Part shown: piece after piece, positions 8,154-61,702 of the stretch | Numbering within the stretch: the stretch's first letter is position 1 | How the letters are laid out: each line of letters opens with the position of its first letter | Virus record (IMG/VR): IMGVR_UViG_3300011934_000017 | Span: 1 to 64,000 of that record | Direction: 5' to 3' (one strand) | Length of the DNA: 64,000 bases | Program-made: the position numbers and the translations under genes | The notes under the pieces: model-generated | What the model saw: only the letters and a program-made list of their open reading frames with translations | Told to the model about the DNA's origin: nothing | Database searches by the model: none

Positions 8154-9242
8154 ATGCAACGAATCGCCGTATACGCAATCGCAAAGAACGAAGAAGAACA
8201 TGTGGATCGCTGGATGGAGTCTGCTCGATATGCTGATGGAATCTTCGTTTTAGATACAGGCAGTACCGACTTTACTAACACTTTCTTGCGCCAGCACGGT
8301 GTGAAGGTAATAGAGGCTCTTATTGAGCCTTTTCGCTTTGATGTAGCCCGTAACATGATTCTCAATCAAATAGATTCGGACAAATACGATTATGCTTTGT
8401 TTCTGGACATGGACGAAGTGTTGGAAGAAAACTGGTATTCGAATCTTCAGGAGATACTGCTAGAGCATCCTCACGCTACAGGACTCCACACACGTATGAT
8501 TTACACGGAGAACAGTGACGGTACTCCTGCTGTCACGTACAATCGTCTCATGTGTACCAAGGTAGGCGATTATGAATGGAAATATCCTGTACATGAGGTA
8601 CTTGTAGCGAAAGACGAAGAAAAGGCTAACGAAATTTACTCGGATATTCTGGTCTATCATTATCCCGATGAAGAAAAAAGCCGTTCAAGTTACCTGAATT
8701 TGTTGAAGCTAGGCGCTCGTGAAGAACCTAACGATCCTCGTTGTTCTCAGTATCTAGCACGGGAATACTTTTCTTTAGGTCAACACGAACACGCTATTCA
8801 AGAATATTCGAACCACCTAGCGCTCGAAAGTAACCCTTGGTTTCGATCAGAAAGCTATCGTAATATGGCGCACTGTTACGAACACCTTGGCCACACGTTA
8901 GAATCTAGGAACTGCCATTTGTTTTCTTGCGCCGAAGCTCCTGATATACGCGAGTCCTGGGGAGAAGCCTGTGCGTTCTACTATCGTATGGATAGAATAC
9001 ACTCGGCTTTGAGCTGTATTGAAAACATGTTAGATGTTCAAGAACCTCCTACACACTCCATTATCAGGAATGACGCTTATTACAACTCTTGGCCTCATCA
9101 CATGGCTGCCATTTGTTACGACAGACTAGGAGACGAAGAGAAAGCAAGACAGCATATCCAACTTGCTTTTCAGTTATCTCCAGGGGATCCTGCTATTGCT
9201 TCGGACCTGATGACCATCTGCGATATTCAGGTTCAACCCTAG
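8154..9242 (+). CDS. Family 2 glycosyltransferase with C-terminal TPR repeats
   Basis: IAKNEE...DTGSTD...FDVARN...LDMDE (DxD)...VHE; helical TPR-like C-terminal half. Confidence 0.85.
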   Translation: MQRIAVYAIAKNEEEHVDRWMESARYADGIFVLDTGSTDFTNTFLRQHGVKVIEALIEPFRFDVARNMILNQIDSDKYDYALFLDMDEVLEENWYSNLQEILLEHPHATGLHTRMIYTENSDGTPAVTYNRLMCTKVGDYEWKYPVHEVLVAKDEEKANEIYSDILVYHYPDEEKSRSSYLNLLKLGAREEPNDPRCSQYLAREYFSLGQHEHAIQEYSNHLALESNPWFRSESYRNMAHCYEHLGHTLESRNCHLFSCAEAPDIRESWGEACAFYYRMDRIHSALSCIENMLDVQEPPTHSIIRNDAYYNSWPHHMAAICYDRLGDEEKARQHIQLAFQLSPGDPAIASDLMTICDIQVQP

Positions 9243-9270
9243 TTAAACCATCCTCTCACTAATTTTCATA

Positions 9271-9278
9271 CTAAATAG
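9271..9278 (+). promoter_or_regulatory. Putative late promoter, TAAATA motif
   Basis: ctaaatag just upstream of the RBS of 9291. Confidence 0.45.
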
Positions 9279-9290
9279 AGAGGTAATTAT

Positions 9291-10868
9291 ATGGCCCACG
9301 TTACTTTAAGGCTGTTTGAATCGACAGCCATTTCTAAACCCAGTAGGATGCATTCAGACAAGAAAGCCAAGTCTAAAAAGCATATTGGTAATCGGTTTAA
9401 ACGATTGACCAAAGCTCAGTTTCTTGATCTGGCTACAAAAGAGCAGGCTCGATACCTTGATCACTTTCCTAAGTCTAGTCATAGAAAGCTAGTAGGTTCA
9501 AAAGGTAAGAAAGGTAAAGAACAGCCTGCGGTACAACGACGCAAAAACGCTAAGAAGGCCGAACCTGCAAAGCCGAAAGAGAAAGAAAAGCCTAAGAAAG
9601 AACGCATTAAAAAGCTTTCCCGCGAAGACTTTGATAGGCTTTCTAATAAGGAACAGAAGGCATACAAAAAGGCGTTTCCCAAGAACTCCTTTAAGGGAAA
9701 AAAGCATCACGTTGCCAAAAAGAAAAGCATAGTAGAGAAGAATAAGACGGGTGATTCAGGAGAGACCGTACTCACCGGTTCTCCAGATGCGAAGAAAAAG
9801 AAGAAAGCTGAAAAGAAAATACTAAAAGCAGGACGCGATAAAGCCAAGAGTGAACTTCGCCACAGTGTTACTCAAGAATCCGTAGATGCTATCAAAAGAA
9901 CCTCTCCCGGCGATCTTAGGGAAGCAAGCGAGAATCTTAAACGCAATAGAAACGCTAACGTCAAAGCAATAGAAGAAACCTTAAAAGGTGGTTCCGACTT
10001 TGATTCTTTTTCTTCTCAAGAGATAGATAAAATTCAAAGGAACTTGAAACAAGAGTCTGAGAAAGAAGACCCCGATCTTCCCGAAGAAACTATAAAGAAA
10101 GGAAAGAAACTGGCCGATCGATTGAAGCCGGATGCGCCTCAAGAGTTAACAGAAGATGAACTTCGCGTTATATCTGATATTCACCCTAAGCGCAAAAAGA
10201 AAGAGCGCTTCTGGCAGAAAGACTTGAAGGTACTCAAGGGTCTTGTCACAGGCGAGAAAGTAGAACCAGAAGGTAGAAGTAATGCGATGTTGGCGCTGGG
10301 TGTTGTAGCTCGCTATGCTTTAATTGCTGGTGCTGTTACGGCTGTTTCTATGGGCGCAGCGCCTGCCGCTTTGCATATAGCACAATCGCTGTTTGAACAG
10401 TGGGATTCCTTTAATGTTTCTGCTTCTACTGATCTTTTATCGGATGATGAAGAGAACGAGGAAGACGAAGAAACACGGAATACCATAGGTCTTGCTTATG
10501 ATGCTGTAGCCGACTATCTACAAAACGTGGATCATGAAGAGTTTGTACAGTCCATTGATAGCACGTTCCTTGAGTTTCGCGCAAAAGCTTCTAGCGATCC
10601 ATACCTAATGTCACTTTTGTTAAAAGACTTGTCGTTGGTTGAAGACTGTTGCGAGCTAAACGATGCGGGTGCTTTGGTGTTAGCTGAAGCTGACATAGTT
10701 ATGCAAAAGCTCCAACCTCTTTTGGAGGAAGCTGGCTTCAATCGCGTCAACGATATCTTCTATCGTGGAAATGACGCTGTTGGTGTTTATGCGTCTGGAC
10801 ACAGAAGTAAAATCCTTTCTCTTCCTTCTCCTTCCACTATTGTTGACGATATAATGGAGACACAATGA
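9291..10868 (+). CDS. Lys-rich putative internal head / DNA-binding protein with a hydrophobic segment
   Basis: Very basic N-terminal third; duplicated F..L...EQ..Y...FP motif; hydrophobic LALGVVARYALIAGAVTAV stretch. Confidence 0.65.
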   Translation: MAHVTLRLFESTAISKPSRMHSDKKAKSKKHIGNRFKRLTKAQFLDLATKEQARYLDHFPKSSHRKLVGSKGKKGKEQPAVQRRKNAKKAEPAKPKEKEKPKKERIKKLSREDFDRLSNKEQKAYKKAFPKNSFKGKKHHVAKKKSIVEKNKTGDSGETVLTGSPDAKKKKKAEKKILKAGRDKAKSELRHSVTQESVDAIKRTSPGDLREASENLKRNRNANVKAIEETLKGGSDFDSFSSQEIDKIQRNLKQESEKEDPDLPEETIKKGKKLADRLKPDAPQELTEDELRVISDIHPKRKKKERFWQKDLKVLKGLVTGEKVEPEGRSNAMLALGVVARYALIAGAVTAVSMGAAPAALHIAQSLFEQWDSFNVSASTDLLSDDEENEEDEETRNTIGLAYDAVADYLQNVDHEEFVQSIDSTFLEFRAKASSDPYLMSLLLKDLSLVEDCCELNDAGALVLAEADIVMQKLQPLLEEAGFNRVNDIFYRGNDAVGVYASGHRSKILSLPSPSTIVDDIMETQ

Positions 10869-24948: not shown

Positions 24949-27900
24949 ATGGCCGAAGATAGAATCACAAGCGACATGAAAAGCATGGCCAGCTCTTACG
25001 ATACTCCTAGAGCCGTGTCGCTTCTTCAGGATAAAGCGAGAGACGCAAGCGCTTATGTAAAAGACAAGATTGGTAAAGTACAAAACGCTAGGGAAGCAGC
25101 CTCTGACGAATCGAAGTCGTCTTCGGGGAATCAAGTAAAAGGCGCTACGGCTGCGGCGCAATCTATTCAAGAAGGCTTTTCTGGACTAAAAGACAGAAAT
25201 ACAAATCGGCATCGAGAAGTCATAGGCTCGATGCGTGAACAGACAAGCCAGCTAAAAGGAATATCTAACTCGGTAAGCGGCGTGTATAACATGCTGTTTA
25301 AAGAGAAGTATGGTCCTGATGTAGAGCCTTACTCCAGAGAAGAAGAAGGCATAAGCGGTCTGTCCGATCAGCTTCGTCGTCAACACGAAGAGGTAATGGA
25401 CGAGCTTAAAAAGATTCGAAAAGCTGTAGTGATGGGAGGAAGTGGAGGTGGTGGCTTCTTTGGAGCTTTTGGTGGACGCCCAGGTTCTAGGGGACGACGT
25501 ACTTCTCGCAGTAGAACACCACCTCCCAGTTCGCGTTCTGGTACACGATCAGGTACACCACCTCCCAGTTCTCGTTCTGGTACACCACCACCTACGCCTA
25601 ATCAGAATCGTAGTTCTTCTAGCTGGGGAAGGGCTGCTGCTAATGGTGGTGGCGGACCGCCCCCTCCACCTTCTGGTGGGAATAGTTGGTTAAATCGTGC
25701 GCAAAACTTAGGCAATTCCAAGTACGCTAGAATTATAAGCGGTGTAGTTACAGGAGCTACAGCAGCGTATACTGGCATAAAGATGCTAGGAGGTAATGAC
25801 TCTCCAGACATATCTGAGCTTGGGTCTAGTGGAACACCTTCTTCGTCTCCCGCTTCTTCGCCTGCCGCGCAAAGCACTGGAAGTTCTTATAGTGGACTAG
25901 GCAGTGTAAGTGCTGGAGAAGAGTCGCGCCAAGGTGTACACACAATAAGTACAGGTGTAGGCGATCACGGCGGTGTCAGTTATGGTACTCATCAGTTAGC
26001 TACTGAAAATGGAAGTATGGCTGCTTTTCTTCGATCAGAAGAAGGCCAACCCTATGCTCCTGCTTTTCAGGGTATGCAGCCCGGTACTAATGCATTTAAC
26101 GCACGTTATTCCGAAGTAGCAAAGGCGCATGAGAAAGACTTTGCTGCCGCGCAAAAGAATTACATTTTCCGAACTCACTACGCACCTATGCTTAACAACG
26201 TTAAGCGTGGTTCTGGGTTCGATGCAACAAATCGTGGGCCTGCTGTTCACGAAATGCTTTATTCTACTGGCGTACAATATGGTGGAGGTACGTCTGTAAT
26301 CAATAATGCGTTAAAAGGGTATGACCCTAACAACATGACGGATGCCGATATCATTCGTCGTGTGCAAGAATACAAAGGGCAAACAGTAGGTCAATACTTC
26401 AGATCGTCTGCTCCTGATACGCAAAGGTCTGTGTATAGAAGAACGTTCCGAGAGCGTGATACGCTTTTGGCAATGGATGCAGAGTATCAACAGCAACTGG
26501 CTGCTGGTGGACAACCGGCTTCCCAAGAAAATACTGCTCAGGTAGCCTCAACGCAAACAGGTAACAGTCCTGTATCTGCTAACACTGTAGCTCAAGAAGA
26601 ACCCGTATCTTTAGGTTCACCACCGCAGCAACAACCAGAACAGGTGGCAAGCAACAATTCAAATACGGCTATTGATGCTGCAACTGTCGCACTAACAGCA
26701 GGTGCTGCGGGAAGTGCCGCGCTTTCGTTAGTTCCTGCTAGATCGACACCGACACCTGCTGTTCCACCTTCTGTGACGCCTGCTGCCGCATCTGGAGCAA
26801 ACGCAAACAGGGTTATATCTGCAACACCGGCAACACCCCGATCAATCACAGCGACTCCTCCACCTTCAATAGCTGCGCCGACTCCGACTCCAACTCCTCC
26901 GTCTACTGGTGCAGCACCTAGATCGGGAGCGCCAGCAGCACCTCCACCTACTGGAGGCGGTTCTACATCTATAGCAGGAAAAGCAGTACAAGGGCTTAAA
27001 AAGGCTCCAGTTCTTTCGTTAGGCTTCGCTGCGCTCGATACTGCCACAGTGCTATCTAACGAAGAACTAAGTACAGGTGAAAAAGCAGGCGAGATAACAG
27101 ATATAGCCGGAGCTACGACTGGAGGTATAGTAGGCGCTAAGGTTGGTGCTTCTTTTGGATTACTTGGTGGACCGCTTGCTCCTGTAACTGTACCTCTAGG
27201 CGGCTTAGTAGGCGGCTTCTTAGGTTACATGGGAGGCAAAAAAGCAACAAACTCTGCGCGAAACTTCGCAGGGGAAATGCTTACAGATGAAGAAGGTGAA
27301 GTAGAAGAAAACGTACCCATAACAGGCGCTGAAGTAGCAGCTAGTTCACCTTCTACTGAAGAAGATGGTTTGCCTTCTAATCATCCTATGATGGTAGCGC
27401 AAAGGAATATCCAGCGCGAAGCTGAAAACAGTGCGGATACCTTAGAAGATGCGCAGACAGGAAATTCCGTTCAAGTAGGAACAACATCTTCTGCTTCTGA
27501 AACTGCGCAAACATTGGCTGCGGCAGAGTCTAGTCAGCTAATAACGAAGGATGCGTTTGATGCTGCTGTCGCTGTTGGAAGTCAAGACTCTACTTCACCT
27601 ACAGTAGTGAATAATTTTCCTGTACAAGGAGAATCAGCTACCCCTCAAAACGAACCTTCGACTGGCACACCGACTCCTGCACAGACGAATGCTCCTCAAG
27701 TTTCTCAAGCTCCAAGTGCTCCACGCCCTGAAGTATCGGCTAGACCTATTCAAGATACTGTGGGCTTACGCGATGATATGGAGAGACCGAGTTTAGTTGC
27801 GGATGCTGCGTTCACTGCAATGTCAGGTATTCTTTCTACTGTAGGTATTGATACAGACGCTTTACGCAATGCCAGTACGCGACGTGAAGCGCCGGAACAC

Positions 27901-28686
27901 ATGCGAAAGAATCTTCATGGGTATGCGGAATCTACGGCACCTGCTGTTACGTCTCGCACTCAAAATAGGCAAACGCCCGACGTTTATTCGCCTACGGTAA
28001 GTACATCACAGTCAGATGATCAACCTGCCCGTGTACAGGAAGAAGAAGAAGAAGCGGCTGCACCTACACGTCCTACTACAGTACGTGAAGGCAACAGAGT
28101 ATCCCATGACTTTACGCAGAATATACCTACGACTTCAACGCCTTCTACGGGTTCTGAAATAACAGATGAAGACTTAACAACACGCCCTGTAGGCAGTTCG
28201 AACGCCCCTTCATTTAGACCTCAAGACCAGATAAACCTTGATATAAATGAAGCCCATGCTCGAATGAATATTCGACCTATGGGTGCAAGGCAAGCAGCAT
28301 CGACACCTAAGTTTACACCTCAAAGAGGACAGACTGCGCCTGCAGAAGGTACTGCACCTGACTTCATGAGTTCGGTAGGTTACAATGGAAGTTCAATGGT
28401 GTCTAGCGTAGCTGGTCAGAATCAAAGTAACGCCAGTCCTTCTTCCGATGTTTCTACGCAGACTGTTAGCGATGTTCCTGCCCAGCGCCAGCAGTTTGAT
28501 AGTGTTCAGAAAGTCATGATGATGGAGCCTCCTACACAAGCGAGAGAAAAGCCCGATAACGCGCCGCAAGGTAGAACACCTTCTACAGGCACTTACGAGC
28601 CTCGCAACCATCAACCCTCTATCGATGAAACGCCAGCACTTGTAAGCGACTTCGGTCTAACCCTCCTTAACACAGGATTTATATAA
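24949..28686 (+). CDS. Tape-measure-like protein with an internal peptidoglycan hydrolase domain
   Basis: GDHGGVSYGTHQL...HEMLYSTGVQYG lysozyme-like (VgrG3 C-terminal-type) segment; GAxxG glycine zipper; long P/S/T-rich regions. Confidence 0.65.
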   Translation: MAEDRITSDMKSMASSYDTPRAVSLLQDKARDASAYVKDKIGKVQNAREAASDESKSSSGNQVKGATAAAQSIQEGFSGLKDRNTNRHREVIGSMREQTSQLKGISNSVSGVYNMLFKEKYGPDVEPYSREEEGISGLSDQLRRQHEEVMDELKKIRKAVVMGGSGGGGFFGAFGGRPGSRGRRTSRSRTPPPSSRSGTRSGTPPPSSRSGTPPPTPNQNRSSSSWGRAAANGGGGPPPPPSGGNSWLNRAQNLGNSKYARIISGVVTGATAAYTGIKMLGGNDSPDISELGSSGTPSSSPASSPAAQSTGSSYSGLGSVSAGEESRQGVHTISTGVGDHGGVSYGTHQLATENGSMAAFLRSEEGQPYAPAFQGMQPGTNAFNARYSEVAKAHEKDFAAAQKNYIFRTHYAPMLNNVKRGSGFDATNRGPAVHEMLYSTGVQYGGGTSVINNALKGYDPNNMTDADIIRRVQEYKGQTVGQYFRSSAPDTQRSVYRRTFRERDTLLAMDAEYQQQLAAGGQPASQENTAQVASTQTGNSPVSANTVAQEEPVSLGSPPQQQPEQVASNNSNTAIDAATVALTAGAAGSAALSLVPARSTPTPAVPPSVTPAAASGANANRVISATPATPRSITATPPPSIAAPTPTPTPPSTGAAPRSGAPAAPPPTGGGSTSIAGKAVQGLKKAPVLSLGFAALDTATVLSNEELSTGEKAGEITDIAGATTGGIVGAKVGASFGLLGGPLAPVTVPLGGLVGGFLGYMGGKKATNSARNFAGEMLTDEEGEVEENVPITGAEVAASSPSTEEDGLPSNHPMMVAQRNIQREAENSADTLEDAQTGNSVQVGTTSSASETAQTLAAAESSQLITKDAFDAAVAVGSQDSTSPTVVNNFPVQGESATPQNEPSTGTPTPAQTNAPQVSQAPSAPRPEVSARPIQDTVGLRDDMERPSLVADAAFTAMSGILSTVGIDTDALRNASTRREAPEHMRKNLHGYAESTAPAVTSRTQNRQTPDVYSPTVSTSQSDDQPARVQEEEEEAAAPTRPTTVREGNRVSHDFTQNIPTTSTPSTGSEITDEDLTTRPVGSSNAPSFRPQDQINLDINEAHARMNIRPMGARQAASTPKFTPQRGQTAPAEGTAPDFMSSVGYNGSSMVSSVAGQNQSNASPSSDVSTQTVSDVPAQRQQFDSVQKVMMMEPPTQAREKPDNAPQGRTPSTGTYEPRNHQPSIDETPALVSDFGLTLLNTGFI
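25506..25595 (+). repeat. Imperfect tandem repeat encoding TPPPSSRSG
   Basis: acaccacctcccagttc(g/t)cgttctggtacac present twice, plus partial copies. Confidence 0.7.
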
Positions 28687-34596: not shown

Positions 34597-35418
34597 ATGG
34601 AAACTAAGCAACCAAGACAGGAACATTTAATATTTGATTGCCTAGAGCGCATTCAAAAGTTAGACAACGAACCTAACAGACCTATTAGCGAATATAGTCT
34701 GTCACATTCCGTTCAAACCAAAAAGAAGATAGCAGACCTGTTAAAAGAATGCCTTAAAGACCTTTTTCAGATAAGTGTTCGGGATGCTGAATTTTATGCG
34801 TATGCCAAAATGTTGTTGTCTATGTTCTTTAAGCAGCAAGAGGACAAAATTTACGACTTCGATGTTAGAATAAGTCCTAGAAGTGATACTATTGATATGC
34901 TTTTCGAACAAGAGGATACGCCTACCGTTTCGTTTGAGTATGACAAACCGTTAAGACGTCCTCGTACCAACTGGCATACGTTTTTTATGGATCAAGCATT
35001 TCAAGCGGCTGAGCGATCTTCTTGTGCTTCAGGACGAAGAGTAGGTGCTACGTTCGTAAAAAACAAAGCACCTCTAGTAACATCTTACAATGGAGTGCCT
35101 TCTAAATACCCACACCCTGTTGAATGTCCTCGTTTGGTAGCAGGATGCGTCAGCGGAGAAGGACTAGATATGTGTCCTTGTAACCACGCAGAAATGAATG
35201 GGCTTGCTATTGCTGCGAACAAAGGCATTTCTTTAGCTGGAAGTATTTTGTATTGTACTTCAAAGCCGTGCGCTGGTTGCATGGGTATTCTCGCAAACGT
35301 AGGTCTGGATTCTATCGTGTATCACGACGACTATCCTCATCCACTTTCAAAGAAAATTTCAGATTACGCTAAACTCAAAGTGTTTAGTATTCACGAACTG
35401 TTAGGAGTTAAAGAATGA
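34597..35418 (+). CDS. dCMP deaminase with an N-terminal extension
   Basis: RSSC...VGA, YNG.P, HAEMN, T.KPCAGC. Confidence 0.88.
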   Translation: METKQPRQEHLIFDCLERIQKLDNEPNRPISEYSLSHSVQTKKKIADLLKECLKDLFQISVRDAEFYAYAKMLLSMFFKQQEDKIYDFDVRISPRSDTIDMLFEQEDTPTVSFEYDKPLRRPRTNWHTFFMDQAFQAAERSSCASGRRVGATFVKNKAPLVTSYNGVPSKYPHPVECPRLVAGCVSGEGLDMCPCNHAEMNGLAIAANKGISLAGSILYCTSKPCAGCMGILANVGLDSIVYHDDYPHPLSKKISDYAKLKVFSIHELLGVKE

Positions 35419-35744
35419 ACTACGATCCTAATCTAACCAACAGTGGTCGTATGGCTACTCAAACAGTCAAATTGGAATTTCAATTATGGGAAAGCAAAGC
35501 ATATTATGAAATAAAAGTAGGCGGCAACTGTACGGGACTTACTGTGATTGATTGTGCTGTAAGCAACCTTTACGATAAGCTTCCTTCTCTCTATGAGAAT
35601 GCCGATCTGCCTTACATCTTACTTGAAGATGAAAAAGGCAATACCTTAGAAACAGCAGACGAAGATGAAAAAGGCGAAGACTGGTTGAAAGATATGCTAG
35701 TGAAAGCCGAAATCGTTAAAATTGAACCCGATACCCGAGATTGA
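35415..35744 (+). CDS. Conserved phage protein (DUF5406-like)
   Basis: NYDPNLT.SGRMA.QTV...VGGNC.G...EDWLKDMLV; family recognised from memory. Confidence 0.6.
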   Translation: MNYDPNLTNSGRMATQTVKLEFQLWESKAYYEIKVGGNCTGLTVIDCAVSNLYDKLPSLYENADLPYILLEDEKGNTLETADEDEKGEDWLKDMLVKAEIVKIEPDTRD

Positions 35745-35747
35745 ATC

Positions 35748-36530
35748 ATGAACAAAGAAACACTTGCTTTATATCCTTCCAGCTTTGAACTATCCTACGA
35801 ACAGCTAGAAGAAATGCTGAAGCTACAGCAGCAGGCTAACGCTGTAATGATAAAAGGCGATGAAGATACGCCTTACTACAGGGCTTCTGTTGTTGAAAGC
35901 GTGGAAGCTATTCAGCACTTTGGTTACAAGTGGTGGAAAGCAACAGAATCCGATATCGGTCAGACTAAGATGGAGTTGATTGATATTCTCCACTTCGCGC
36001 TGTCTGACTTCCTTAAAGAACCATCGAACAACGATCTTGTCTACGATGCTTTAGAGCTTGCACGTAGTCTGGCAGAGCCTGTTGTTATCTATCCTATCGG
36101 CTCGTTGTTGCATGATAAAACTTACCTAGACAACAGATCAACACTTGCCGCCATGCGAGTAGGTGATTGCATTATTCACCAACTATATTCTTTGGATTTG
36201 CTTACTTTCAATGATCTGGTCGAGCAGCTAATCTTTGTAAGCCTGAAAGACGGTAAGACCAGCTTTCCACATCTGTATCTTCTGTTTGAAAAGCTCGATA
36301 TGGTGCCTATTGAAGTGCATGGTCTATACGTCGGTAAAAACACGTTGAATAAGTTTCGTATGGCTAACGGACAGAAGGAAAACACGTATTACAAAACGTG
36401 GGACGGAAGAGAAGACAACGAGCATCTAACAGACTTCATTTTGCAGAGCGCTGATAAGGGAGAAAAACTTACGGCAAAAACCGTGTATAATTTCTTAGCA
36501 GCTACCTACTCGAACTGCGAACTATCTTAA
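35748..36530 (+). CDS. dut: Dimeric (all-alpha) dUTPase
   Basis: ESVE...GYKWWK, MELIDILHF, Y.GKN.LN.FR..NG, W.GREDNEHL. Confidence 0.85.
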   Translation: MNKETLALYPSSFELSYEQLEEMLKLQQQANAVMIKGDEDTPYYRASVVESVEAIQHFGYKWWKATESDIGQTKMELIDILHFALSDFLKEPSNNDLVYDALELARSLAEPVVIYPIGSLLHDKTYLDNRSTLAAMRVGDCIIHQLYSLDLLTFNDLVEQLIFVSLKDGKTSFPHLYLLFEKLDMVPIEVHGLYVGKNTLNKFRMANGQKENTYYKTWDGREDNEHLTDFILQSADKGEKLTAKTVYNFLAATYSNCELS

Positions 36531-37353: not shown

Positions 37354-37584
37354 ATGCTTATACGTCCAGAAAGTCATGGAATACAAATCATTCGTAAAAT
37401 CTTTCAGGTTAAACAGGCAGTGCTTTTGGACGCAAGATATTCAGGAAAGAGCGTAGTGGTCTATCGCTCTTTTATAGGGCGTCTATTCAAACCTCAACGA
37501 TACGCTACTTTGAAGGAGATAATGAAGTATGAGGATTCGAGGTATTCGAAAAACACTAAGAAAGCTGTTTCGCGTGAGACCTGA
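37354..37584 (+). CDS. Small hypothetical protein (paralog of the next ORF)
   Basis: VYRSFIGRLFK shared with 37529..37774. Confidence 0.65.
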   Translation: MLIRPESHGIQIIRKIFQVKQAVLLDARYSGKSVVVYRSFIGRLFKPQRYATLKEIMKYEDSRYSKNTKKAVSRET

Positions 37585-37774
37585 AGTGTTGTGGTGTCCT
37601 GAAAGTCCTGGAATGCGCGTCATGGTATATCGTTCTTTTATAGGACGTCTGTTCAAATCCAAACACTTTGCAACCTTAGGGGAATCAATAAAACACTCTA
37701 ATACAAAAATCGGTGCCCTACATCTAAAAAAGGATATGGAAAATGAAAAACAGAAACATAAGCCTTGCAGATAA
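37529..37774 (+). CDS. Small hypothetical protein (paralog of the previous ORF)
   Basis: VYRSFIGRLFK; RBS aaggag. Confidence 0.6.
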   Translation: MRIRGIRKTLRKLFRVRPEVLWCPESPGMRVMVYRSFIGRLFKSKHFATLGESIKHSNTKIGALHLKKDMENEKQKHKPCR

Positions 37775-38213
37775 GAGTCGTTACTCAGACGAAGAAGCCG
37801 AAGCTCAAAGAAAAGCTAAGGTATATCCTTCGCTAAGCCGAGAATACGCGGAAAGCATTATTGACGCTATCCATTATGACATTCTCAGTGATGGCAAAAC
37901 CACTGCCTGCACCTTAGAGATTTTCAACAATAGCTTTTCCGTTCAAGGTCATAGCAGTTGCCTAGATGCTCGAAACTTTGATGCTAAGCTCGGACGTACT
38001 TATTCGTACAAACGGGCCTTTGACAGGCTGATGTTAATTGTGGCCGCAACTGTTGCAGCCTTCGATAAAGACTGGAAAGAGAATCGTAGACTAGAAAATT
38101 TAGCACAGGAACTGGAGTCTGATATACAACACTATACAGACAACTACCTGACTGATGCCGACGGTGAAATGTTGAACCTGCTAGTCAAATACAAGAAAAT
38201 GCTCGAAGTGTAA
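37743..38213 (+). CDS. Phage gp49/66-family protein (Acb4-like nucleotide sponge candidate)
   Basis: ESII..IHY...TT.CTL...NSFSV.G.SSC.D..NFD..LG... Confidence 0.7.
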   Translation: MKNRNISLADKSRYSDEEAEAQRKAKVYPSLSREYAESIIDAIHYDILSDGKTTACTLEIFNNSFSVQGHSSCLDARNFDAKLGRTYSYKRAFDRLMLIVAATVAAFDKDWKENRRLENLAQELESDIQHYTDNYLTDADGEMLNLLVKYKKMLEV

Positions 38214-40982: not shown

Positions 40983-41294
40983 ATGGAACTTGCAAACAGA
41001 ATTTCATTGGATCACATTGAATCCTGCATCCACGCTGTAGAGTACACGACTCTTCGCAATACGGCTTCTGAAGTGGCAGCACCTGTTACAATCTGCCACG
41101 TTATGCTGAAAAACGGAAAGAATGTCATTGGCATTAACTACGGCGCCATTGATCCAGAACAGCACAGCGCTGAAATGGGTAAGAAGGAAGCTTACAAGCA
41201 AGCTATCGATAAACTGTTTGAGCTTGAAGGTTATGCTTTAATCAACAGGCACTTCGAAACAGGTTCGGGCCTTCTGATCGAAAATAAGGAGTAA
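40983..41294 (+). CDS. Phage gp49/66-family protein (second Acb4-like sponge candidate)
   Basis: ISLDHIES.I...Y...VTIC...LKNG..V.G...IDPE..SAEMG...A...AIDKLFELEGYAL. Confidence 0.75.
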   Translation: MELANRISLDHIESCIHAVEYTTLRNTASEVAAPVTICHVMLKNGKNVIGINYGAIDPEQHSAEMGKKEAYKQAIDKLFELEGYALINRHFETGSGLLIENKE

Positions 41295-56578: not shown

Positions 56579-59500
56579 TTATAAAGGTAGGGCCATGCAG
56601 CCACCGCGTGAGTTTCGAACAACAAAGTGTTGTGTTAAATCTAAAGAGCTTAGATCATAAAATCCATCTTCATCCACAGGAATTTCGATTGTGTCCCTGC
56701 TATATCCAATTTTGTTTTCTAGCAGCTTCAGTCCAAAGAAGCGTCCTCTTACGTGTGCATTTTCCGGATCGCTGCATACAGCAGTAGGTGAAATAGCGAA
56801 AGTACCTCCGTTTCCTTTTGGAATAAAGTCGTCTAGGTAAAGACGCCATTCTCCAGAATACGATTGGTGATTAACAGCGTAGTAGTAGTAATAACCGCCA
56901 CCATAACTTCTTCTGCGGCGCCTTCTTATACACCCAATGTAGGCATAGGCCACTGTGTTAAAAGTAGGCGCTTGGAAGTGAGACATAACAGCAAAGGAAG
57001 AAGCATTCTGTCCAACCGCATTTCTCAAGTCCCGAGGCAGAGAATAAGCGTATATTTCGTTTCGACTCATATCCCCTATGCGCTTAGGTTGAAGCGTTCC
57101 ATAACAAACGTCTCCTTGTACCCAAGCAAACAACGGAAACTCTCCAGGATATTCCATCTCCATCAGCTTTTCTATTTCGAAACAGCCAACGAAGGATGGT
57201 TTTAACTCTGAAGACAAGTCTGAAAAGAACGCTAACCAACGAGGATTAACAAACATCATCAACGAGTCTTCACCAGAAGAACGTAGACGTTGTGTATAAC
57301 CTAGATCGTCCGACATGTACGCTAGATTGGTTCCTACATGGAATCTAGGATCCCAGTATTCGAACACTTTGAACTCAAGGTAGTTGTTTCGAATATCAAG
57401 CAACACGTACTTGTAACCACCGTATTCACAAGGAGCGCGAAAGCAAGAGCGTGGTCTTCCATCCATTGAAAGTCCGACCGGTATAACATCTGATTCCCAT
57501 TCTTTTTCGACTTCTGTTAAGAAATTAGAGTGAATGGGCGTACTGGTTACTTGACTGTCTTCGTCTCTTCCCCAAGTAACAAGTTTTCCTGAAGCGTTCA
57601 TTACGATGAAATGCCCTACACCTGCTTCAATGTAATCGAACGGACCTTGCGGAATTAGACCGCGGTCAAAGGACAGATCGCCCCAGACTGCAATAGTCCC
57701 ATCGTCACGAAGCGCACCACAGAAATTGGTACCGGCTGCTATCGCTTTAAACGTACCTGTTGGTGTGTCGGACACCTCACCGTTAGAGTCTTCACCCCAA
57801 ACAACTAGCGTACCGTCGGTGCGTAGTGCTATGGTGTGCTTCTCTCCGCAGTCAACGTCGAGAAAGTATCCAGAAGGTGCCTTAGAAACGTGCCCGTCAC
57901 CGTCAAATCCCCATACGTATAGCTCATTCTGATAGGTAATTGCGGCGCTTTGATAACGAGAAGCTGCAATTTTCACAAACGGATTTAGAACAGCAGTTGC
58001 TTCGTCTGGAGAACCACCAATCTGTTTGAATGTGTTATCACCCCACACGCGAATGACACCATTACTATCGAGCGCCATGCTGTGTGCGCTGCCTGCCGCT
58101 ACTTGAACGTACCCCTCACCCAAAGGTTTATTGGTTATCTGATTCTGACCATCATTTCCCCAACCTACGATAGAGCCAGAGTCTGTCAGAGCTAGAGCAT
58201 GAAACTGACCAGAAGCTACAGCTTTGAACCTACCTGTCGGAACGTTTCCTACTTCTCCGTACAAGTCTCGACCCCAAGCTTCGATTTCAAAAGCACTATT
58301 GATCGCTAGATTATGCCAAGAAGCAGAAATAGGTTGTTCAGGCTTAACGATATCTGGGAACGTGATCGGATATTCGTAGTTATTTCCTTCTACAGTAGAC
58401 GTAGTTACTTCCCCCACTTCCACGTAGCTGTGCTCAGGCAGAGCTATGGAGAGCTTGTTCATTTGCTCGCCTACCACAGGTACTTGAACAGTTACTTCAC
58501 GCCATATCAGATCTGGTGGAATGCACGTTAAGTCAGGAAAAACACCTAGCAGCATTTCAATTTCAGGGACTGAAGAGTAAGAGCCTGGAGCAGGTGCACC
58601 GGGAACATCAGACGATACAGCATCCTCTAAGACAATATTGCCACCGTTCTTAAACGCAATTTCTATATTTAGAAATGTTTTGTCCAAAAATAAGGAAGCG
58701 TAAGGAGTGCTCGACAGTGTGACGTTTACGCTAGACACTCGAAGAGCTAAGCGTTCTGGATTGTCAACGCCCGAGAATTGGAAAGCATCTACAAACTCTC
58801 CGCCTAGCGTGACACCGTAGACGGTGAACACTCGACTGTCTAGGGAATCGACTTCGAACGTGTTGTTACCGGAAAATGAAAGCGTTAGAGGATCAAATAA
58901 AGCTAACTCAGTCTTTATGATTCCGTCTTGAAAAGCACCGCTCGTATTCTTTAGGACAAAGACATTCTCAGAAGCTAAGTCATCCACAAGTGCCGGTAAA
59001 AAGTGAGAAGACGTACCAATCGCAATGTAACGTAGAGGTAGCCCTGATTTTACTTCAATGGAAGAACCAGGATTAGAAGCTTCAGTTGCCGCAAATAAGC
59101 TACCATCTATCTGACCTATAAGCGAAACTTCGTTAGGTGTCTGCCCCGCAGAATGAACGTCAACAAGATTGATTGTTTCATCGACGATTGCTTCGGTTCC
59201 TTCTTGTGAAGCACTAACGATGGTGCCGAACTCATTAACATTGATCGTAATAGGTCCTGAAGTATTGCCGCCAAAGCTAAGCTTGTTATCGATCAGGCCA
59301 ATAATGAACTCTGGTGGTGGAACGAACTCAAGGTTAGGTGAAAGCAGTGGAATTAAAGCTTGTGCTTGTTGCGCATCGTAAACACCTGCAGATGGAACAC
59401 CTTCAACGTCATCTGAAATCACGTCGTGAAGAGTTACCGTCTTGTCCGCTCCTTCAAGTGCTTGGAACGAAAAGCTCAGGTCGATGAAGGTCTTATCAAC

Positions 59501-61702
59501 AAAGACAGAACTATAGTTACTGGCGCTTTGAACAACAGTTGCACCTGTAAGACGATTAGCTAGATTATCTTCCGCTACGTTCAAAAGGCGCAGTATGTCG
59601 GAACCTTCACCAATACCTAAAGTGATGCCGTACACGTTCAGAGAAGAATCATTTTCTCCGTCAATTTTCACCGTGGTCTGTGAAGTTATTTCGTTTAAGC
59701 TTTCTACGGTATAGAAGGAAAAGCCGGACTTGCGCACACCACTACTAAAAGCATCAGTCCCATTCTTTAAGACAAATACATTGGGTTCAGAAATTTCAGT
59801 AATAGAAGACGGTAAGTAAATGGCTTGATTGCCAAACAACACTTCTCGAAATGTCTTTCCGGCACTTTTTATACCGACGACAGAATCCGCGTCAAACAAG
59901 GAAAGATCGACTGTACCAGAAAACGAAAATGTTGGTGATCCTGAAACAGATACGCTGTGAATGTCAGTCAAAGGAATTGGTGTAGACAGTTCAACTGAAA
60001 TCAGTTCCCTTTCTGCTCCTACAACTCCTGCGTCTGTGACTGAAAGTTCAATATCTCCGATTGCAGTGCCTTCGATTCTTAACTCGTTATCTACCAGAGT
60101 TAAATACAGCGAAGGTGGTGGAGTATAGACGATATTGTTAGACAACATGGTCACAAAATCGTCGGTAACAGGAGGTTCGTACAAACCTGCAGGAGGCACT
60201 CCTGGTACATCATCTGAAATGATGTTTACCAAACGTACTTTCTTTGTGTGTCCCAAGAAAGAGGTAATAGATATATCGAGAGTAATGTAGCTTTTATCTA
60301 AAAATAAGCCAGAGTACGCTTCAGTCCCTTCTTCGATTAGGACTTGCTCAATTCTGTCAGCAAGTCCCGACTCTTCCACATATATGAAGTCGAGTAGGTC
60401 AGCCCCTGCTCCGGTTCCCAACGTTGTGCCGTATATCGTGAGGTCTGAGTTGTTTCGTGTATCTATATCAACGGTGAGACCAGACGTAACAACATCAATA
60501 GAGCTACGTGTATAAATGGAGAAACCTTGCTTTAGAGCGTTATTTTCTAAAGCGTCTGTTCCATTCTTTATGGCAAATACGCCAGGTGTTCCCAACATAT
60601 CAACTGTAGCTGGTGCGTAAAGCTCGATAGATTCTGCCGCGATCTTTCGGAATACTTTGCCCAGCACAGCAGTTCCAGGTGCAGTACCTTGATCAAACAG
60701 GGAAGCATCCGTAACACCGGAAGCATTGAGCGTTATGCCTGTATCTACAAAGCTGCGAATGTCATTTAGATTGTATTGTCCAGAGTTTGATGCTTCAACG
60801 CCTTCGCGTGTAGCGAACAACTGTCCAGAAACGTCGAAGTATAAATTTACAGGACCAGTAGCAGTGCCGGAAAAACTAATTGCTCCTGCATTCAGATCAG
60901 CCTCAAAGGTAGGTGGCGGAACATCGTAAATAACGTTCTGCTCCACCATAGGAACAAATGACGTAGCCTGCTGACCTGTGTATGTTCCTACAGGAGGAGC
61001 ACCTGTGGCATCACTCGCTATAGTAGCATACAATGTAATGTAGGTCTGCGTTGCTTCTTTTACAAACGTTAGCGTTATATCAAGGAAGGTCTTAGCTAAA
61101 AAGATGTCCTTGTATTTGCTTGTGTTTTCCGCAACAACGACCTTTGTCAAAAGATTTTCAAGATCACCTGCGTATACGTTCTTGAAAAACAAAGAGTCAG
61201 CGCTAGTGCCTGTTCCAAAGTTGAAGCCGTGAAACTCGTAGTCGGATCCATTTAGGACAACTTCACGCTCACTTTGAACAGCCAAAGTCTGCAAGGAAGT
61301 TGAGGTATAGATCGAAAACCCTTGCTTAGTGTCGCCTTCAATTTGTGTATCCGAAAACGTCTTCACAACGAATACGGACACATCTTGAGTGGGGTCACTA
61401 TTAGCGGGTAGATAGTACGTGTCTTGTCCAAAAACTACTGGACGAAACGCTTTACCCAGAATAGAGAAAGAAGGTTGCCAAGTAAATTCAACAGAGCCTG
61501 AGACAGTCAGATCAAGTTCTGAAGGAAACGTGACTGATCGAATATCCTCAATTCGAATATTGGTTACTTCAGTTCGTGTTCCTTGTGTGACGGTCAACAA
61601 GCCTGTAGTTTCAAAGACTACGCTTACGGCTTCAGTATTGTAATCGGAGAACGAAAGATTGCCCGTTCCGTCCAATGTTGCTTTTATTTGACTATCAGCC
61701 AT
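56579..61702 (-). CDS. 1707-aa fibre protein: four ~265-aa repeats, RCC1 propeller, C-terminal fibre-family domain
   Basis: Repeats K.GFSIYT...YG.TLG.G...LFLDKTF...SDDV.G.P; G..H.LAL...G....WG RCC1 units; C-terminal YKYVLLD...RGRFFGLKLL. Confidence 0.8.
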   Translation of the reverse strand: MADSQIKATLDGTGNLSFSDYNTEAVSVVFETTGLLTVTQGTRTEVTNIRIEDIRSVTFPSELDLTVSGSVEFTWQPSFSILGKAFRPVVFGQDTYYLPANSDPTQDVSVFVVKTFSDTQIEGDTKQGFSIYTSTSLQTLAVQSEREVVLNGSDYEFHGFNFGTGTSADSLFFKNVYAGDLENLLTKVVVAENTSKYKDIFLAKTFLDITLTFVKEATQTYITLYATIASDATGAPPVGTYTGQQATSFVPMVEQNVIYDVPPPTFEADLNAGAISFSGTATGPVNLYFDVSGQLFATREGVEASNSGQYNLNDIRSFVDTGITLNASGVTDASLFDQGTAPGTAVLGKVFRKIAAESIELYAPATVDMLGTPGVFAIKNGTDALENNALKQGFSIYTRSSIDVVTSGLTVDIDTRNNSDLTIYGTTLGTGAGADLLDFIYVEESGLADRIEQVLIEEGTEAYSGLFLDKSYITLDISITSFLGHTKKVRLVNIISDDVPGVPPAGLYEPPVTDDFVTMLSNNIVYTPPPSLYLTLVDNELRIEGTAIGDIELSVTDAGVVGAERELISVELSTPIPLTDIHSVSVSGSPTFSFSGTVDLSLFDADSVVGIKSAGKTFREVLFGNQAIYLPSSITEISEPNVFVLKNGTDAFSSGVRKSGFSFYTVESLNEITSQTTVKIDGENDSSLNVYGITLGIGEGSDILRLLNVAEDNLANRLTGATVVQSASNYSSVFVDKTFIDLSFSFQALEGADKTVTLHDVISDDVEGVPSAGVYDAQQAQALIPLLSPNLEFVPPPEFIIGLIDNKLSFGGNTSGPITINVNEFGTIVSASQEGTEAIVDETINLVDVHSAGQTPNEVSLIGQIDGSLFAATEASNPGSSIEVKSGLPLRYIAIGTSSHFLPALVDDLASENVFVLKNTSGAFQDGIIKTELALFDPLTLSFSGNNTFEVDSLDSRVFTVYGVTLGGEFVDAFQFSGVDNPERLALRVSSVNVTLSSTPYASLFLDKTFLNIEIAFKNGGNIVLEDAVSSDVPGAPAPGSYSSVPEIEMLLGVFPDLTCIPPDLIWREVTVQVPVVGEQMNKLSIALPEHSYVEVGEVTTSTVEGNNYEYPITFPDIVKPEQPISASWHNLAINSAFEIEAWGRDLYGEVGNVPTGRFKAVASGQFHALALTDSGSIVGWGNDGQNQITNKPLGEGYVQVAAGSAHSMALDSNGVIRVWGDNTFKQIGGSPDEATAVLNPFVKIAASRYQSAAITYQNELYVWGFDGDGHVSKAPSGYFLDVDCGEKHTIALRTDGTLVVWGEDSNGEVSDTPTGTFKAIAAGTNFCGALRDDGTIAVWGDLSFDRGLIPQGPFDYIEAGVGHFIVMNASGKLVTWGRDEDSQVTSTPIHSNFLTEVEKEWESDVIPVGLSMDGRPRSCFRAPCEYGGYKYVLLDIRNNYLEFKVFEYWDPRFHVGTNLAYMSDDLGYTQRLRSSGEDSLMMFVNPRWLAFFSDLSSELKPSFVGCFEIEKLMEMEYPGEFPLFAWVQGDVCYGTLQPKRIGDMSRNEIYAYSLPRDLRNAVGQNASSFAVMSHFQAPTFNTVAYAYIGCIRRRRRRSYGGGYYYYYAVNHQSYSGEWRLYLDDFIPKGNGGTFAISPTAVCSDPENAHVRGRFFGLKLLENKIGYSRDTIEIPVDEDGFYDLSSLDLTQHFVVRNSRGGCMALPL

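What the first reader, a model, noticed from the sequence alone, without database searches (positions are those of the whole stretch)
37743..38213. gp49/66-family (Acb4-like) sponge with extra N- and C-terminal helices
Seen: the family core motif, but with the usual ..W.LEGY end replaced, a ~25-aa leader and a ~50-aa acidic tail. Known (recalled): Acb4, a 3'3'-cGAMP sponge, belongs to the Phage_gp49_66 family. Inference: a diverged sponge that may bind a different signal (other CBASS, Thoeris or Pycsar nucleotides).
Basis: partly seen in the sequence, partly recalled or inferred. Interest (0 to 1): 0.6.

Follow-up and report, generated by a model that had tools for sequence, protein, structure and literature searches.

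The report
Divergent Acb4-family sponge with helical tail
This jumbo-phage gene encodes a rare, divergent member of the Acb4 family of proteins that soak up bacterial alarm nucleotides, and it carries a C-terminal helical hairpin that matches no known domain; it is a modest variation on a known theme.

Summary
The ORF at 37743-38213 (+, 156 aa) is real and belongs to PF13876, the Acb4 sponge family. It scores 37.9 bits against a cut-off of 27. Its model matches the SPO1 Acb4 crystal structure 9e4w best (Z 10.8). A homotetramer with Acb4-like interfaces is predicted (score 0.77, best control 0.00).

- The family hinge motif (W..EGY) is replaced.
- The tail is about 50 aa and acidic (net -5).
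- The leader helix (residues 14-26) occurs in about half the family. Only residues 1-13 are specific to this clade.

The tail sits where relatives carry a fused Sequestin, Tad2 or RyR sponge domain. It is not detectably any of these: no Pfam hit, a profile comparison no better than shuffled controls, and a shorter hairpin. Only four such proteins were found among 1.84 billion cluster representatives.

Most pocket positions carry the family's commonest residue. Two pocket-loop positions that are acidic or neutral in the two characterised members are basic here (R77, K82), and the hinge wall is lost. A shifted ligand preference is therefore possible but untested.

Most likely this is a tetrameric cyclic-dinucleotide sponge against CBASS-type signalling. 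I rate it a new variant of a known kind, of moderate interest.

The parts
37730..37734 (+). Shine-Dalgarno-like AAGGA, 8 nt upstream of the start codon
   Evidence: Read directly from the sequence.
37743..38213 (+). CDS of the 156-aa divergent Acb4-family (PF13876) protein, P0001; the stop codon is 38211-38213
   Evidence: ORF list. PF13876 at 37.9 bits against a cut-off of 27. PDB Acb4 9e4w at E 0.004. Foldseek's top 13 hits are all 9e4w. VIA Z 10.8.
37743..37832 (+). N-terminal leader, aa 1-30, modelled as helix 16-25. Residues 14-26 are a helix shared with about half the family. Residues 1-13 are clade-specific.
   Evidence: Model. Column occupancy. PHROG matches from residue 11. Predicted contacts of residues 12-31 with residues 72-89 of another protomer.
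37770..37787 (+). Clade-specific motif D-x-S-R-Y-S (aa 10-15), conserved in three of the four clade members. Residues 12-14 are predicted to touch the pocket loop of a neighbouring protomer.
   Evidence: Clade alignment. Interface residue list.
37833..38057 (+). Acb4 core, aa 31-105: helix, three antiparallel strands (40-47, 53-60, 65-72), then the start of the long helix alpha4.
   Evidence: AF2 model with pLDDT 96-98 over this stretch. VIA alignment of model 31-107 to 9e4w 15-92, rmsd 2.8 over 75 residues.
37959..38003 (+). Beta3-alpha4 pocket loop, aa 73-87. It holds the equivalents of SPO1 Acb4 V56, Y57, F62, N63, I66 and T70, plus the clade-invariant R77, K82 and T86.
   Evidence: Residue mapping from the HMMER alignment to 9e4w, with contact residues taken from the paper. 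Family frequencies.
38028..38054 (+). Replaced hinge, aa 96-104. The family consensus is L-W-x-L-E-G-Y-L-L; here it reads L-M-L-I-V-A-A-T-V. With no Gly the helix is modelled as running on unbroken.
   Evidence: Column frequencies. Model helix 81-134, against a helix break at 87-91 in a true Acb4-Sequestin fusion.
38058..38210 (+). Acidic C-terminal tail, aa 106-156 (net -5). It continues alpha4 to residue 134, has a 3-residue turn with a conserved D-x-D-G just after it, and ends in helix 138-155. It matches no known domain.
   Evidence: Model. Charge. No Pfam hit. Sequestin HMM E 8.5. hhalign probability 0.1-0.3%, below shuffled controls. Only generic helical-hairpin structural matches. No stand-alone relatives found.
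40983..41294 (+). Second PF13876 paralogue in the same genome (103 aa). It keeps the L-E-G-Y hinge, has no tail, and is 25% identical to P0001 over the core.
   Evidence: PF13876 at 68.2 bits. Whole-genome scan finds exactly these two copies. BLASTP E 5e-7.

Best explanation
The gene encodes a phage counter-defence sponge of the Acb4 (PF13876) family.

Shown or computed:
- It has the Acb4 dsRBD-like core.
- It is predicted to form an Acb4-type homotetramer: a beta-sheet sandwich dimer, plus a joint between the end of helix alpha4 and the beta2-beta3 region of the opposite dimer.
- It keeps the family-typical residues at most ligand-contact positions.

Inferred:
- During infection by this PaBG-like jumbo phage, the tetramer sequesters a host cyclic-dinucleotide immune signal. 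By default this would be 3'3'-cGAMP-type CBASS signals, and possibly c-di-AMP as in homologues from phages of Gram-negative hosts. CBASS effectors are then not activated.
- The N-terminal helix is an ordinary family element that the Pfam model leaves out.
- The first 13 residues, specific to this clade, lie over the pocket loop of a neighbouring protomer and may act as a lid.
- The C-terminal 50 residues are a clade-specific helical hairpin that replaces the usual alpha4-alpha5 hinge. Most likely it packs against the same hairpin of the joint partner (L117, L120, Y150). It would then brace the tetramer and rebuild the pocket wall that the hinge normally supplies.
- The hairpin is not a recognisable second sponge domain.
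- Basic residues R77 and K82 in the pocket loop may shift ligand preference.
For: - Family: PF13876 at 37.9 bits against a cut-off of 27. PHROG 3934 and 322 at E about 1e-18.
- Sequence match to solved Acb4 9e4w at E 0.004.
- Fold: AF2 model pLDDT 90.5. Foldseek's top 13 PDB hits are all 9e4w, E 2e-5 to 2e-4, TM by target 0.68-0.78. VIA Z 10.8, rmsd 2.8 over 75 residues, against about Z 7 for the next hits, which are dsRBDs as the paper itself reports.
- Tetramer: score 0.77, best of 3 controls 0.00. That mark was reached by 20 of 30 proteins solved as pairs and 1 of 23 solved as single chains. The runs agree in at least 86% of contacts and partner pLDDT is at least 76. Interface residues 44-74, and 98-109 with 61-67, match the two interfaces described for SPO1 Acb4.
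- Pocket: K52, F65, S66, C73, F79, D80, L83 and Y87 equal the commonest or second-commonest family residue.
- All eight tested homologues bound 3'3'-cGAMP.
- Structural neighbours in the ESM Atlas are all PF13876 clusters.
- Context: a block of small early-type genes in a 220-kb phage with terminal repeats. A syntenic homologue shows saturated synonymous change but 64% protein identity.
Against: - No binding data exist for this protein or its clade.
- The clade sits on a long branch; the nearest non-clade core is about 1.85 substitutions per site away.
- The hinge that supplies the third-protomer phosphate contact in SPO1 (K81) is replaced. L98 and L74 are unusual residues for the family.
- R77 and K82 replace residues that are acidic or neutral in both characterised members.
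- The tetramer prediction may rest on the model's memory of 9e4w. It was also run with four copies and my own alignment, which lies outside the calibration.
- Few tail contacts were confident, so the bracing role is weakly supported.
Confidence: 0.6

Rival explanations
1. It has the same fold and tetramer but has been retargeted. The remodelled pocket (basic R77 and K82, lost W/G/Y hinge, leader lid) binds mainly a signal other than 3'3'-cGAMP-type dinucleotides. Candidates are a cyclic trinucleotide, gcADPR or His-ADPR, or a Pycsar mononucleotide. The canonical paralogue at 40983 would then cover ordinary dinucleotides.
For: - R77, K82 and T86 are invariant in the clade and rare in the family.
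- The pairing of basic 77 and 82 with loss of W97, G101 and Y102 is found only in this clade among 131 sequences.
- The leader is predicted to contact residues 72-89 of a neighbouring protomer.
- Two diverged paralogues in one genome suggest a division of labour.
- Other sponge families (Tad1, Tad2, Acb2 homologues) are known to have members with switched ligands (review PMC13712596).
Against: - Base-stacking and adenine-pocket residues are kept: F65, F79, D80, L83.
- Each deviation also occurs singly in other family members.
- No PF13876 member has been reported to bind anything but cyclic dinucleotides.
Confidence: 0.2
2. It is a dual sponge. The tail is a shrunken, diverged descendant of a fused Sequestin (PF21825) domain. 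It still forms a dimeric pocket that binds 1''-3' gcADPR, so the protein blocks both CBASS and type I Thoeris, as Pseudomonas phage Ab09 gp59 does.
For: - The best full-length matches among cultured phages are 155-aa Acb4-Sequestin fusions of Achromobacter N4-like phages.
- At least 24 of 151 relatives are such fusions.
- The tail occupies the same position and is also a helix-turn-helix.
- MAFFT and a relaxed hhalign place R116-L117 and the Y150..L154 pattern on Sequestin columns.
- The genome has no other Sequestin, Tad2 or RyR gene.
Against: - No PF21825 hit even at E 10.
- A 21-sequence Sequestin HMM gives E 8.5.
- Tail-only hhalign gives probability 0.1-0.3% and a score of 6.8, below the mean of 8.7 for 60 column-shuffled controls.
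- The hairpin is about 20+18 residues and continuous with alpha4. A modelled true fusion has 28+28 residues after a helix break.
- The Sequestin residues needed for activity (E12, Q47, R61 of SequestinA) have no counterpart. The R8 equivalent is present in only 2 of the 4 clade members.
- The tail is acidic (net -5).
- The core tree puts the clade next to tail-less proteins, not fusions.
Confidence: 0.07
3. It is not a nucleotide sponge. The dsRBD-like core binds structured or double-stranded RNA, or the acidic hairpin binds a host protein. The protein would then act as a decoy or inhibitor by direct contact.
For: - The fold is dsRBD-like, with Dicer, RNase III and hibernation factors at Z 6-7.
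- K82-x-x-R85 at the start of the second core helix fits the loose [KR]-x(1,3)-[KR] motif used by RNA-binding viral dsRBDs, which some phage dsRBDs retain (10.64898/2026.07.21.739742).
- The tail resembles generic protein-interaction hairpins such as WXG100, HAMP and HisKA.
Against: - Sequence membership in PF13876 is clear.
- The predicted tetramer buries the sheet face.
- No PF13876 protein is known to bind RNA.
- The KR motif is very loose, and R85 is common in the family (39 of 127).
- The structural hits to the tail are generic and fall below the level that carries meaning for helical segments.
Confidence: 0.1

Closest known systems
Acb4 of Bacillus phage SPO1 (PDB 9e4w; Chang et al., 10.1101/2024.12.30.630793), founding member of PF13876
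   Same: Same Pfam family. Same alpha-beta-beta-beta-alpha core (Z 10.8, rmsd 2.8 over 75 residues). Predicted tetramer with the same two interface types. Equivalents of K36, F48, F62, N63 and I66 are kept (K52, F65, F79, D80, L83).
   Different: Identity is 21-28%. E49, Y57, T70 and K81 become S66, L74, Y87 and L98. The leader is about 14 residues longer. Alpha4 runs on unbroken into a 50-residue acidic hairpin instead of a short alpha5. The pocket loop carries R77 and K82 where SPO1 has Glu.
Acb4 of coliphage N4 (PF13876 protein, locus tag EPNV4_gp48 in NC_008720). It binds 3'3'-c-di-AMP at 111 nM and triggers PanDA and Panoptes (10.64898/2026.08.10.743972).
   Same: Family member from a phage of a Gram-negative host. 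It shares the family-typical pocket residues C73, F79, L83 and Y87 in P0001 numbering.
   Different: N4 Acb4 keeps the W-E-L-E-G-Y hinge, has N77 and E82, and has a 17-residue insertion in the beta1-beta2 region. It has no helical hairpin tail. Its neighbouring gene is a separate Tad2-like protein.
Acb4-Sequestin fusions (PF13876 + PF21825). Examples are Pseudomonas phage Ab09 gp59 (147 aa; tetramer; binds gcADPR tightly and 3'3'-cGAMP more weakly; 10.64898/2026.06.04.730250) and Achromobacter phage Axy24_076 (155 aa).
   Same: Same overall length and layout: an Acb4 core followed by a C-terminal helix-turn-helix. These are the best full-length matches among cultured phages (32% identity over residues 20-154).
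   Different: The tail here gives no PF21825 signal by HMM or profile-profile tests. It is about 42 residues beyond alpha4, against about 65. It lacks the linker break and the Glu, Gln and Arg pocket residues, and it is acidic. The core does not branch with the fusions.
Other modular PF13876 proteins, fused to Tad2-like (PF11195), RyR (PF02026) or DUF1653
   Same: They show that the C-terminus of the Acb4 core is a recurrent attachment point for extra modules. The Acb4-RyR cluster gives the widest structural overlap with this model (141 residues, TM 0.70 by query).
   Different: No sequence match of the tail to any of these domains. The genome holds none of them elsewhere.

Membership tests
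Acb4 / PF13876 (Phage_gp49_66) sponge family | Sequence match to the family profile above the curated threshold | tested here: met
   37.9 bits against a cut-off of 27, E 2.5e-9, residues 33-96. The whole-genome scan gives 39 bits, over the cut-off. Profile-profile comparison to family fusions gives E 1e-28.
Acb4 / PF13876 (Phage_gp49_66) sponge family | dsRBD-like alpha-beta-beta-beta-alpha core that superposes on SPO1 Acb4 | tested here: met
   Model pLDDT 90.5. Foldseek's top 13 hits are all 9e4w. VIA Z 10.8, rmsd 2.8, 75 residues, clearly above the next hits at about Z 7.
Acb4 / PF13876 (Phage_gp49_66) sponge family | Homotetramer built from a beta-sheet sandwich dimer and an alpha4 'joint' between dimers | tested here: met
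   This is a prediction only. Score 0.77, best of 3 controls 0.00. The mark was reached by 20 of 30 solved pairs and 1 of 23 single chains. Runs agree in at least 86% of contacts and partner pLDDT is at least 76. Contacts at 44-74, and 98-109 with 61-67, match the published interfaces. The result may reflect the model's memory of 9e4w.
Acb4 / PF13876 (Phage_gp49_66) sponge family | Ligand-contact residues of the cyclic-dinucleotide pocket | tested here: inconclusive
   Five of ten SPO1 contact positions are kept or conservatively changed (K52, F65, F79, D80, L83). S66, C73 and Y87 match the family majority rather than SPO1. L74 and L98 are unusual. R77 and K82 are clade-specific.
Acb4 / PF13876 (Phage_gp49_66) sponge family | Conserved alpha4-alpha5 hinge motif (K-L-W-x-L-E-G-Y/F) | tested here: not met
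   The protein has M97, V100, A101 and A102 where the family has W (107 of 130), E (62), G (104) and Y or F (110). SPO1 Acb4 itself, and 20 other relatives, also lack the Trp. The motif is therefore typical of the family, not obligatory.
Acb4 / PF13876 (Phage_gp49_66) sponge family | Binds 3'3'-cGAMP or related cyclic dinucleotides and rescues phage from CBASS | not testable with these tools
   This needs purified protein and phage challenge assays.
Sequestin / PF21825 (crAss001_48), considered for the C-terminal tail | Sequence match to the family profile | tested here: not met
   No hit at E up to 10, either for the whole protein or for residues 97-156. The Achromobacter and metagenomic fusions score 50-58 bits. 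A custom 21-sequence HMM gives E 8.5. hhalign gives probability 0.1-0.3%, with the score below shuffled controls.
Sequestin / PF21825 (crAss001_48), considered for the C-terminal tail | Helical hairpin of about 60 residues, set off from the preceding domain | tested here: not met
   A true fusion, P0018, has helix 53-86, a break, helix 92-119, an 8-residue loop and helix 128-155. This protein has a single helix 81-134, a 3-residue turn and helix 138-155.
Sequestin / PF21825 (crAss001_48), considered for the C-terminal tail | Conserved pocket residues (SequestinA R8, E12, Q47, R61). E12, Q47 and R61 are needed for anti-Thoeris activity. | tested here: not met
   In the alignments to fusions, only R116 falls on the R8 column, and only in 2 of the 4 clade members. 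The E12 column is L120. The Q47 region is deleted. The protein ends before the R61 column.
RNA-binding dsRBD proteins | Basic motif [KR]-x(1,3)-[KR] at the start of the second core helix, plus RNA binding | tested here: inconclusive
   K82-x-x-R85 fits the loose pattern. The predicted tetramer, clear PF13876 membership and fold matches of only Z 6-7 argue against this. RNA binding was not testable.

The most novel reading that the evidence does not exclude
The four-member clade may be a re-engineered Acb4 tetramer. The clade-specific N-terminal S-R-Y lid, the basic R77/K82 loop and the new C-terminal hairpin wall would together make a pocket for a signal that no PF13876 protein is known to bind. 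Candidates are a cyclic trinucleotide, an ADPR-derived Thoeris signal or an undescribed messenger. The acidic hairpin would then be a previously unclassified module attached to a sponge.
Probability: 0.2. Interest if true: 0.6.

Novelty: new variant of a known kind. Interest (0 to 1): 0.35.

Why it matters
Acb4 proteins are one of seven characterised families of phage sponges that disarm nucleotide-based bacterial immunity. Their ligand range also decides whether the phage trips guard systems such as Panoptes and PanDA.

A deep-branching clade with a rebuilt pocket wall and an unclassified tail is a natural experiment in how specificity and assembly can change in this small scaffold. It occurs in a jumbo phage that also keeps a canonical copy.

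If its ligand differs, it would widen the known reach of the family. If it does not, it shows that the conserved W/G/Y hinge is dispensable. Either way, the family assignment itself is ordinary, and extensions of Acb4 proteins have already been noted in the literature.

Tried and rejected
1. Tail as Sequestin. Tested with Pfam at E 10, a custom HMM, hhalign on the tail alone and on full length, 60 column-shuffled controls plus a reversed control (one search timed out), comparison of modelled helix layout with a true fusion and a core phylogeny. Rejected as a supported homology and kept as a low-probability rival.
2. Tail as RyR, Tad2 or another fused module. No sequence link. None of these families occurs elsewhere in the genome.
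3. Tail as a domain found elsewhere.
   - The language-model feature search gave no usable hit, and the structure search gave only generic hairpins.
   - A word search with the four tails against 5.8 billion clusters found nothing. Its sensitivity is limited to shared 5-residue words and to proteins of 31-100 aa.
4. Close relatives.
   - Megablast against phage records found none.
   - A scan of IMG/VR by peptide patterns found none.
   - The word search found one relative.
   - The exhaustive profile search found three full-length relatives.
5. NCBIfam has no model for this family.
6. The 390-bp stretch upstream of the gene looked like possible tRNA or ncRNA. ARAGORN and Rfam found nothing. 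It is better read as two small paralogous ORFs.
7. The promoter and terminator scan was uninformative, with counts at or below the shuffled expectation.
8. The 133-aa crAss001 protein hit in BFVD is not crAss001_48, which is a 63-aa stand-alone protein. This lead was dropped.
No read-based evidence of expression or environment was obtained, and no other route was tried.

Nothing human-like, no toxin gene and no alternative genetic code came up. Table 11 was used throughout.
Full report
**What is there**

The window is the first 64 kb of a 220,237-bp phage record with direct terminal repeats. The phage is a myovirus with ribonucleotide reductase and an NAD-dependent ligase. Its tail sheath is 53% identical to that of Pseudomonas jumbo phage PaBG, so the host is probably Gram-negative; this is an inference.

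The ORF at 37743-38213 on the + strand gives 156 aa (P0001). An AAGGA lies 8 nt before the ATG, and there is no alternative in-frame start. It sits in a run of small same-strand genes between a dCMP deaminase / DUF5406 / dUTPase_2 block and an RNase H gene.

**Family and fold**

- P0001 passes Pfam PF13876 at 37.9 bits against a cut-off of 27.
- It matches two PHROG families at E about 1e-18, from residue 11 onward.
- It matches the solved SPO1 Acb4 chain 9e4w at E 0.004.
- The Acb4 paper states that Acb4 homologues make up PF13876. It also says all eight tested homologues bound 3'3'-cGAMP, and that several members carry extra extensions (10.1101/2024.12.30.630793).
- An AlphaFold2 model built on 131 relatives has mean pLDDT 90.5. 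It shows helix 16-25, helix 33-38, strands 40-47, 53-60 and 65-72, one long helix 81-134 and helix 138-155.
- Foldseek's 13 best PDB hits are all 9e4w chains, at E 2e-5 to 2e-4.
- VIA-align gives Z 10.8, rmsd 2.8 over 75 residues (model 31-107). This is well above the dsRBD proteins at about Z 7 that follow.
- All structural neighbours in the ESM Atlas are PF13876 clusters.

**Assembly**

Four copies were folded together. The score was 0.77 and the best of 3 controls was 0.00. That mark was reached by 20 of 30 proteins solved as pairs and by 1 of 23 solved as single chains. The runs agree in at least 86% of contacts, and partner pLDDT is at least 76. The calibration holds only roughly here, because four copies and my own alignment were used, and the solved Acb4 tetramer may be remembered by the model.

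Three interfaces were predicted with confidence:
- A sheet-on-sheet interface, residues 44-74.
- A joint between residues 98-109 and residues 61-67 of another copy.
- Leader residues 12-31 lying on residues 72-89 and 101-105 of a further copy.

The first two match the two interfaces described for SPO1 Acb4. In the tail, only L117, L120 and Y150 were confident contacts, all with the joint partner.

1. The hinge is replaced. The family has K-L-W-x-L-E-G-Y/F-L-L, with W in 107, G in 104 and Y or F in 110 of 130 relatives. P0001 has M97, V100, A101 and A102.
   - Without the Gly, alpha4 is modelled as running straight on.
   - Twenty other relatives, and SPO1 Acb4 itself, also lack the Trp. So do the tail-less nearest neighbours P0029 and P0149.
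2. The leader is mostly not extra. Residues 14-26 align with an N-terminal helix present in about half of the relatives, with consensus L-S/T-D/E-E-E-L-E..L/I. One clear example is P0009. Only residues 1-13, with D-x-S-R-Y-S, are specific to the clade.
3. The tail (residues 106-156) is real and acidic, net -5.

**How rare the clade is**

- A word-indexed search of 5.8 billion clusters found one relative. This is P0002, 154 aa, 58-64% identical depending on the alignment, on a syntenic 26.7-kb contig.
- An exhaustive profile search of 1.84 billion representatives found 191 proteins at E up to 0.001. Only three matched over the full length: P0002, P0003 and P0004, of 154-162 aa. All others matched the core alone.
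- The four form a clade with support 0.90 on a long branch. Their sisters are two tail-less proteins.
- All four come from metagenomic phage contigs rich in small genes.
- Against P0002, DNA identity is 61% and protein identity 64%. Synonymous sites are saturated. Leader, core and tail are all conserved, with dN 0.41, 0.29 and 0.45 respectively.

**What the tail is**

The best full-length matches among cultured phages are 155-aa proteins of Achromobacter N4-like phages (32% identity over residues 20-154). These are PF13876 + PF21825 fusions. PF21825 is Sequestin, a dimeric 3'cADPR sponge against type I Thoeris and the domain most often fused to Acb4 (10.1101/2025.07.12.664507). One such fusion, Ab09 gp59, has been characterised. 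It is a tetramer that binds gcADPR tightly and 3'3'-cGAMP more weakly (10.64898/2026.06.04.730250). At least 24 of my 151 relatives are such fusions. Others carry Tad2, RyR or DUF1653.

I therefore tested whether the tail is a hidden Sequestin. The results were negative:
- Pfam gives nothing even at E 10.
- A 21-sequence Sequestin HMM gives E 8.5.
- Tail-only hhalign gives probability 0.1-0.3%. Its score of 6.8 lies below the mean of 8.7 for 60 column-shuffled controls.
- A full-length hhalign extends only weakly past the core.
- A modelled true fusion has a helix break and then helices of 28+28 residues. Here there are about 20+18 residues with no break.
- The residues needed for Sequestin activity have no counterparts.
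- The core tree does not place the clade among the fusions.

Structure and feature searches of the tail give only generic hairpins. A word search with the four tails found no stand-alone version. I conclude that the tail is a clade-specific helical hairpin of unknown origin. It occupies the slot where relatives carry a second sponge domain.

**The pocket**

SPO1 contact residues were mapped through the HMMER alignment:

| SPO1 Acb4 | P0001 |
|---|---|
| K36 | K52 |
| F48 | F65 |
| E49 | S66 |
| V56 | C73 |
| Y57 | L74 |
| F62 | F79 |
| N63 | D80 |
| I66 | L83 |
| T70 | Y87 |
| K81 | L98 |

- Across 127 non-clade relatives, S66, C73, F65, F79, D80, L83 and Y87 are the commonest or second-commonest residues. 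In this respect SPO1 is the outlier, not P0001.
- L74 and L98 are unusual for the family.
- Residues that are invariant in the clade and rare in the family are D46, S49, F61 (with a one-residue insertion after it), R77, K82 and T86.
- At positions 77 and 82, SPO1 has Glu and Glu. The characterised N4 Acb4 has Asn and Glu.
- Six other relatives have the basic pair at 77 and 82. None of them combines it with loss of the hinge.

Most of the pocket is therefore family-typical. One loop has turned basic, and one wall has been rebuilt.

**Interpretation**

The most likely reading (0.6) is an Acb4-type tetrameric sponge for CBASS cyclic dinucleotides, with the hairpin bracing the tetramer and replacing the hinge wall.

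Rivals:
- The same scaffold, retargeted to another signal (0.2).
- A degenerate Sequestin-derived second binding site in the tail (0.07).
- A non-sponge role in RNA or protein binding (0.1). This is prompted by the dsRBD fold and a loose K-x-x-R motif.

Fold, family membership and the predicted assembly are computed results. Ligand binding, the lid role of the leader and the bracing role of the tail are inferences.

**Novelty**

The protein is a member of a known and large family whose extensions and fusions are already documented. The specific architecture appears to be undescribed and is rare: loss of the hinge, an unclassified acidic hairpin and a basic pocket loop. I rate it a new variant of a known kind, with interest 0.35.

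Noticed in passing
window 40983-41294 (+): The second, 'canonical' PF13876 paralogue (103 aa, 68 bits) keeps the L-E-G-Y hinge. It has Q-H where the family has the nearly invariant N78-F79 (N in 103 and F in 114 of 127 relatives). F79 corresponds to the adenine-pocket F62 of SPO1 Acb4. It also has a 6-residue insertion between strands 1 and 2. Both copies in this phage therefore deviate in the pocket, in different ways.
   Followed up: partly
window 37354-37774 (+): Directly upstream of the gene lies a stretch of about 390 bp that is absent from the syntenic relative L004. It holds an 83-nt direct repeat (71% identity, 166 nt apart) whose differences are largely synonymous. It reads as two overlapping paralogous small basic ORFs of 76 and 81 aa, 45% identical (E 5e-16), sharing V-Y-R-S-F-I-G-R-L-F-K. 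The second ORF overlaps the start of the Acb4-like gene by 32 nt. There is no tRNA, Rfam or significant PHROG match. It may be a remnant of a mobile-element DNA-binding module; this is speculative.
   Followed up: partly
L008 (phage N4, NC_008720) 8633-9486: In the RefSeq N4 record, the PF13876 protein that gives the family its 'N4 Gp49' name carries locus tag EPNV4_gp48 (123 aa, 119.5 bits). The gene tagged gp49 is a Tad2-like (PF11195) protein. N4 thus has an Acb4 gene and a Tad2-like gene side by side. The gene numbering can mislead.
   Followed up: yes
window 24949-28686 (+): A 1245-aa protein carries a type VI secretion VgrG3-like C-terminal domain (PF21277, E 5e-57) at residues 317-502. 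It lies next to the tail sheath and tube region. It is probably the tail spike or hub protein with a cell-wall-degrading module.
   Followed up: no
window 56579-61702 (-): A 1707-aa protein carries RCC1-like repeats (PF13540, PF25390) around residues 1195-1386. It is likely a large virion or fibre protein.
   Followed up: no
window 34597-36530 (+) and L004 3227-5190: A conserved nucleotide-metabolism block lies upstream: ribonucleotide reductase, a dCMP deaminase with an N-terminal extension of about 120 aa, DUF5406 and a dUTPase_2 (MazG-like) protein. The block is syntenic between this phage and the only close relative contig. The Acb4-like gene lies just downstream in both.
   Followed up: partly
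No information on expression or on the sample environment was obtained.
   Followed up: no
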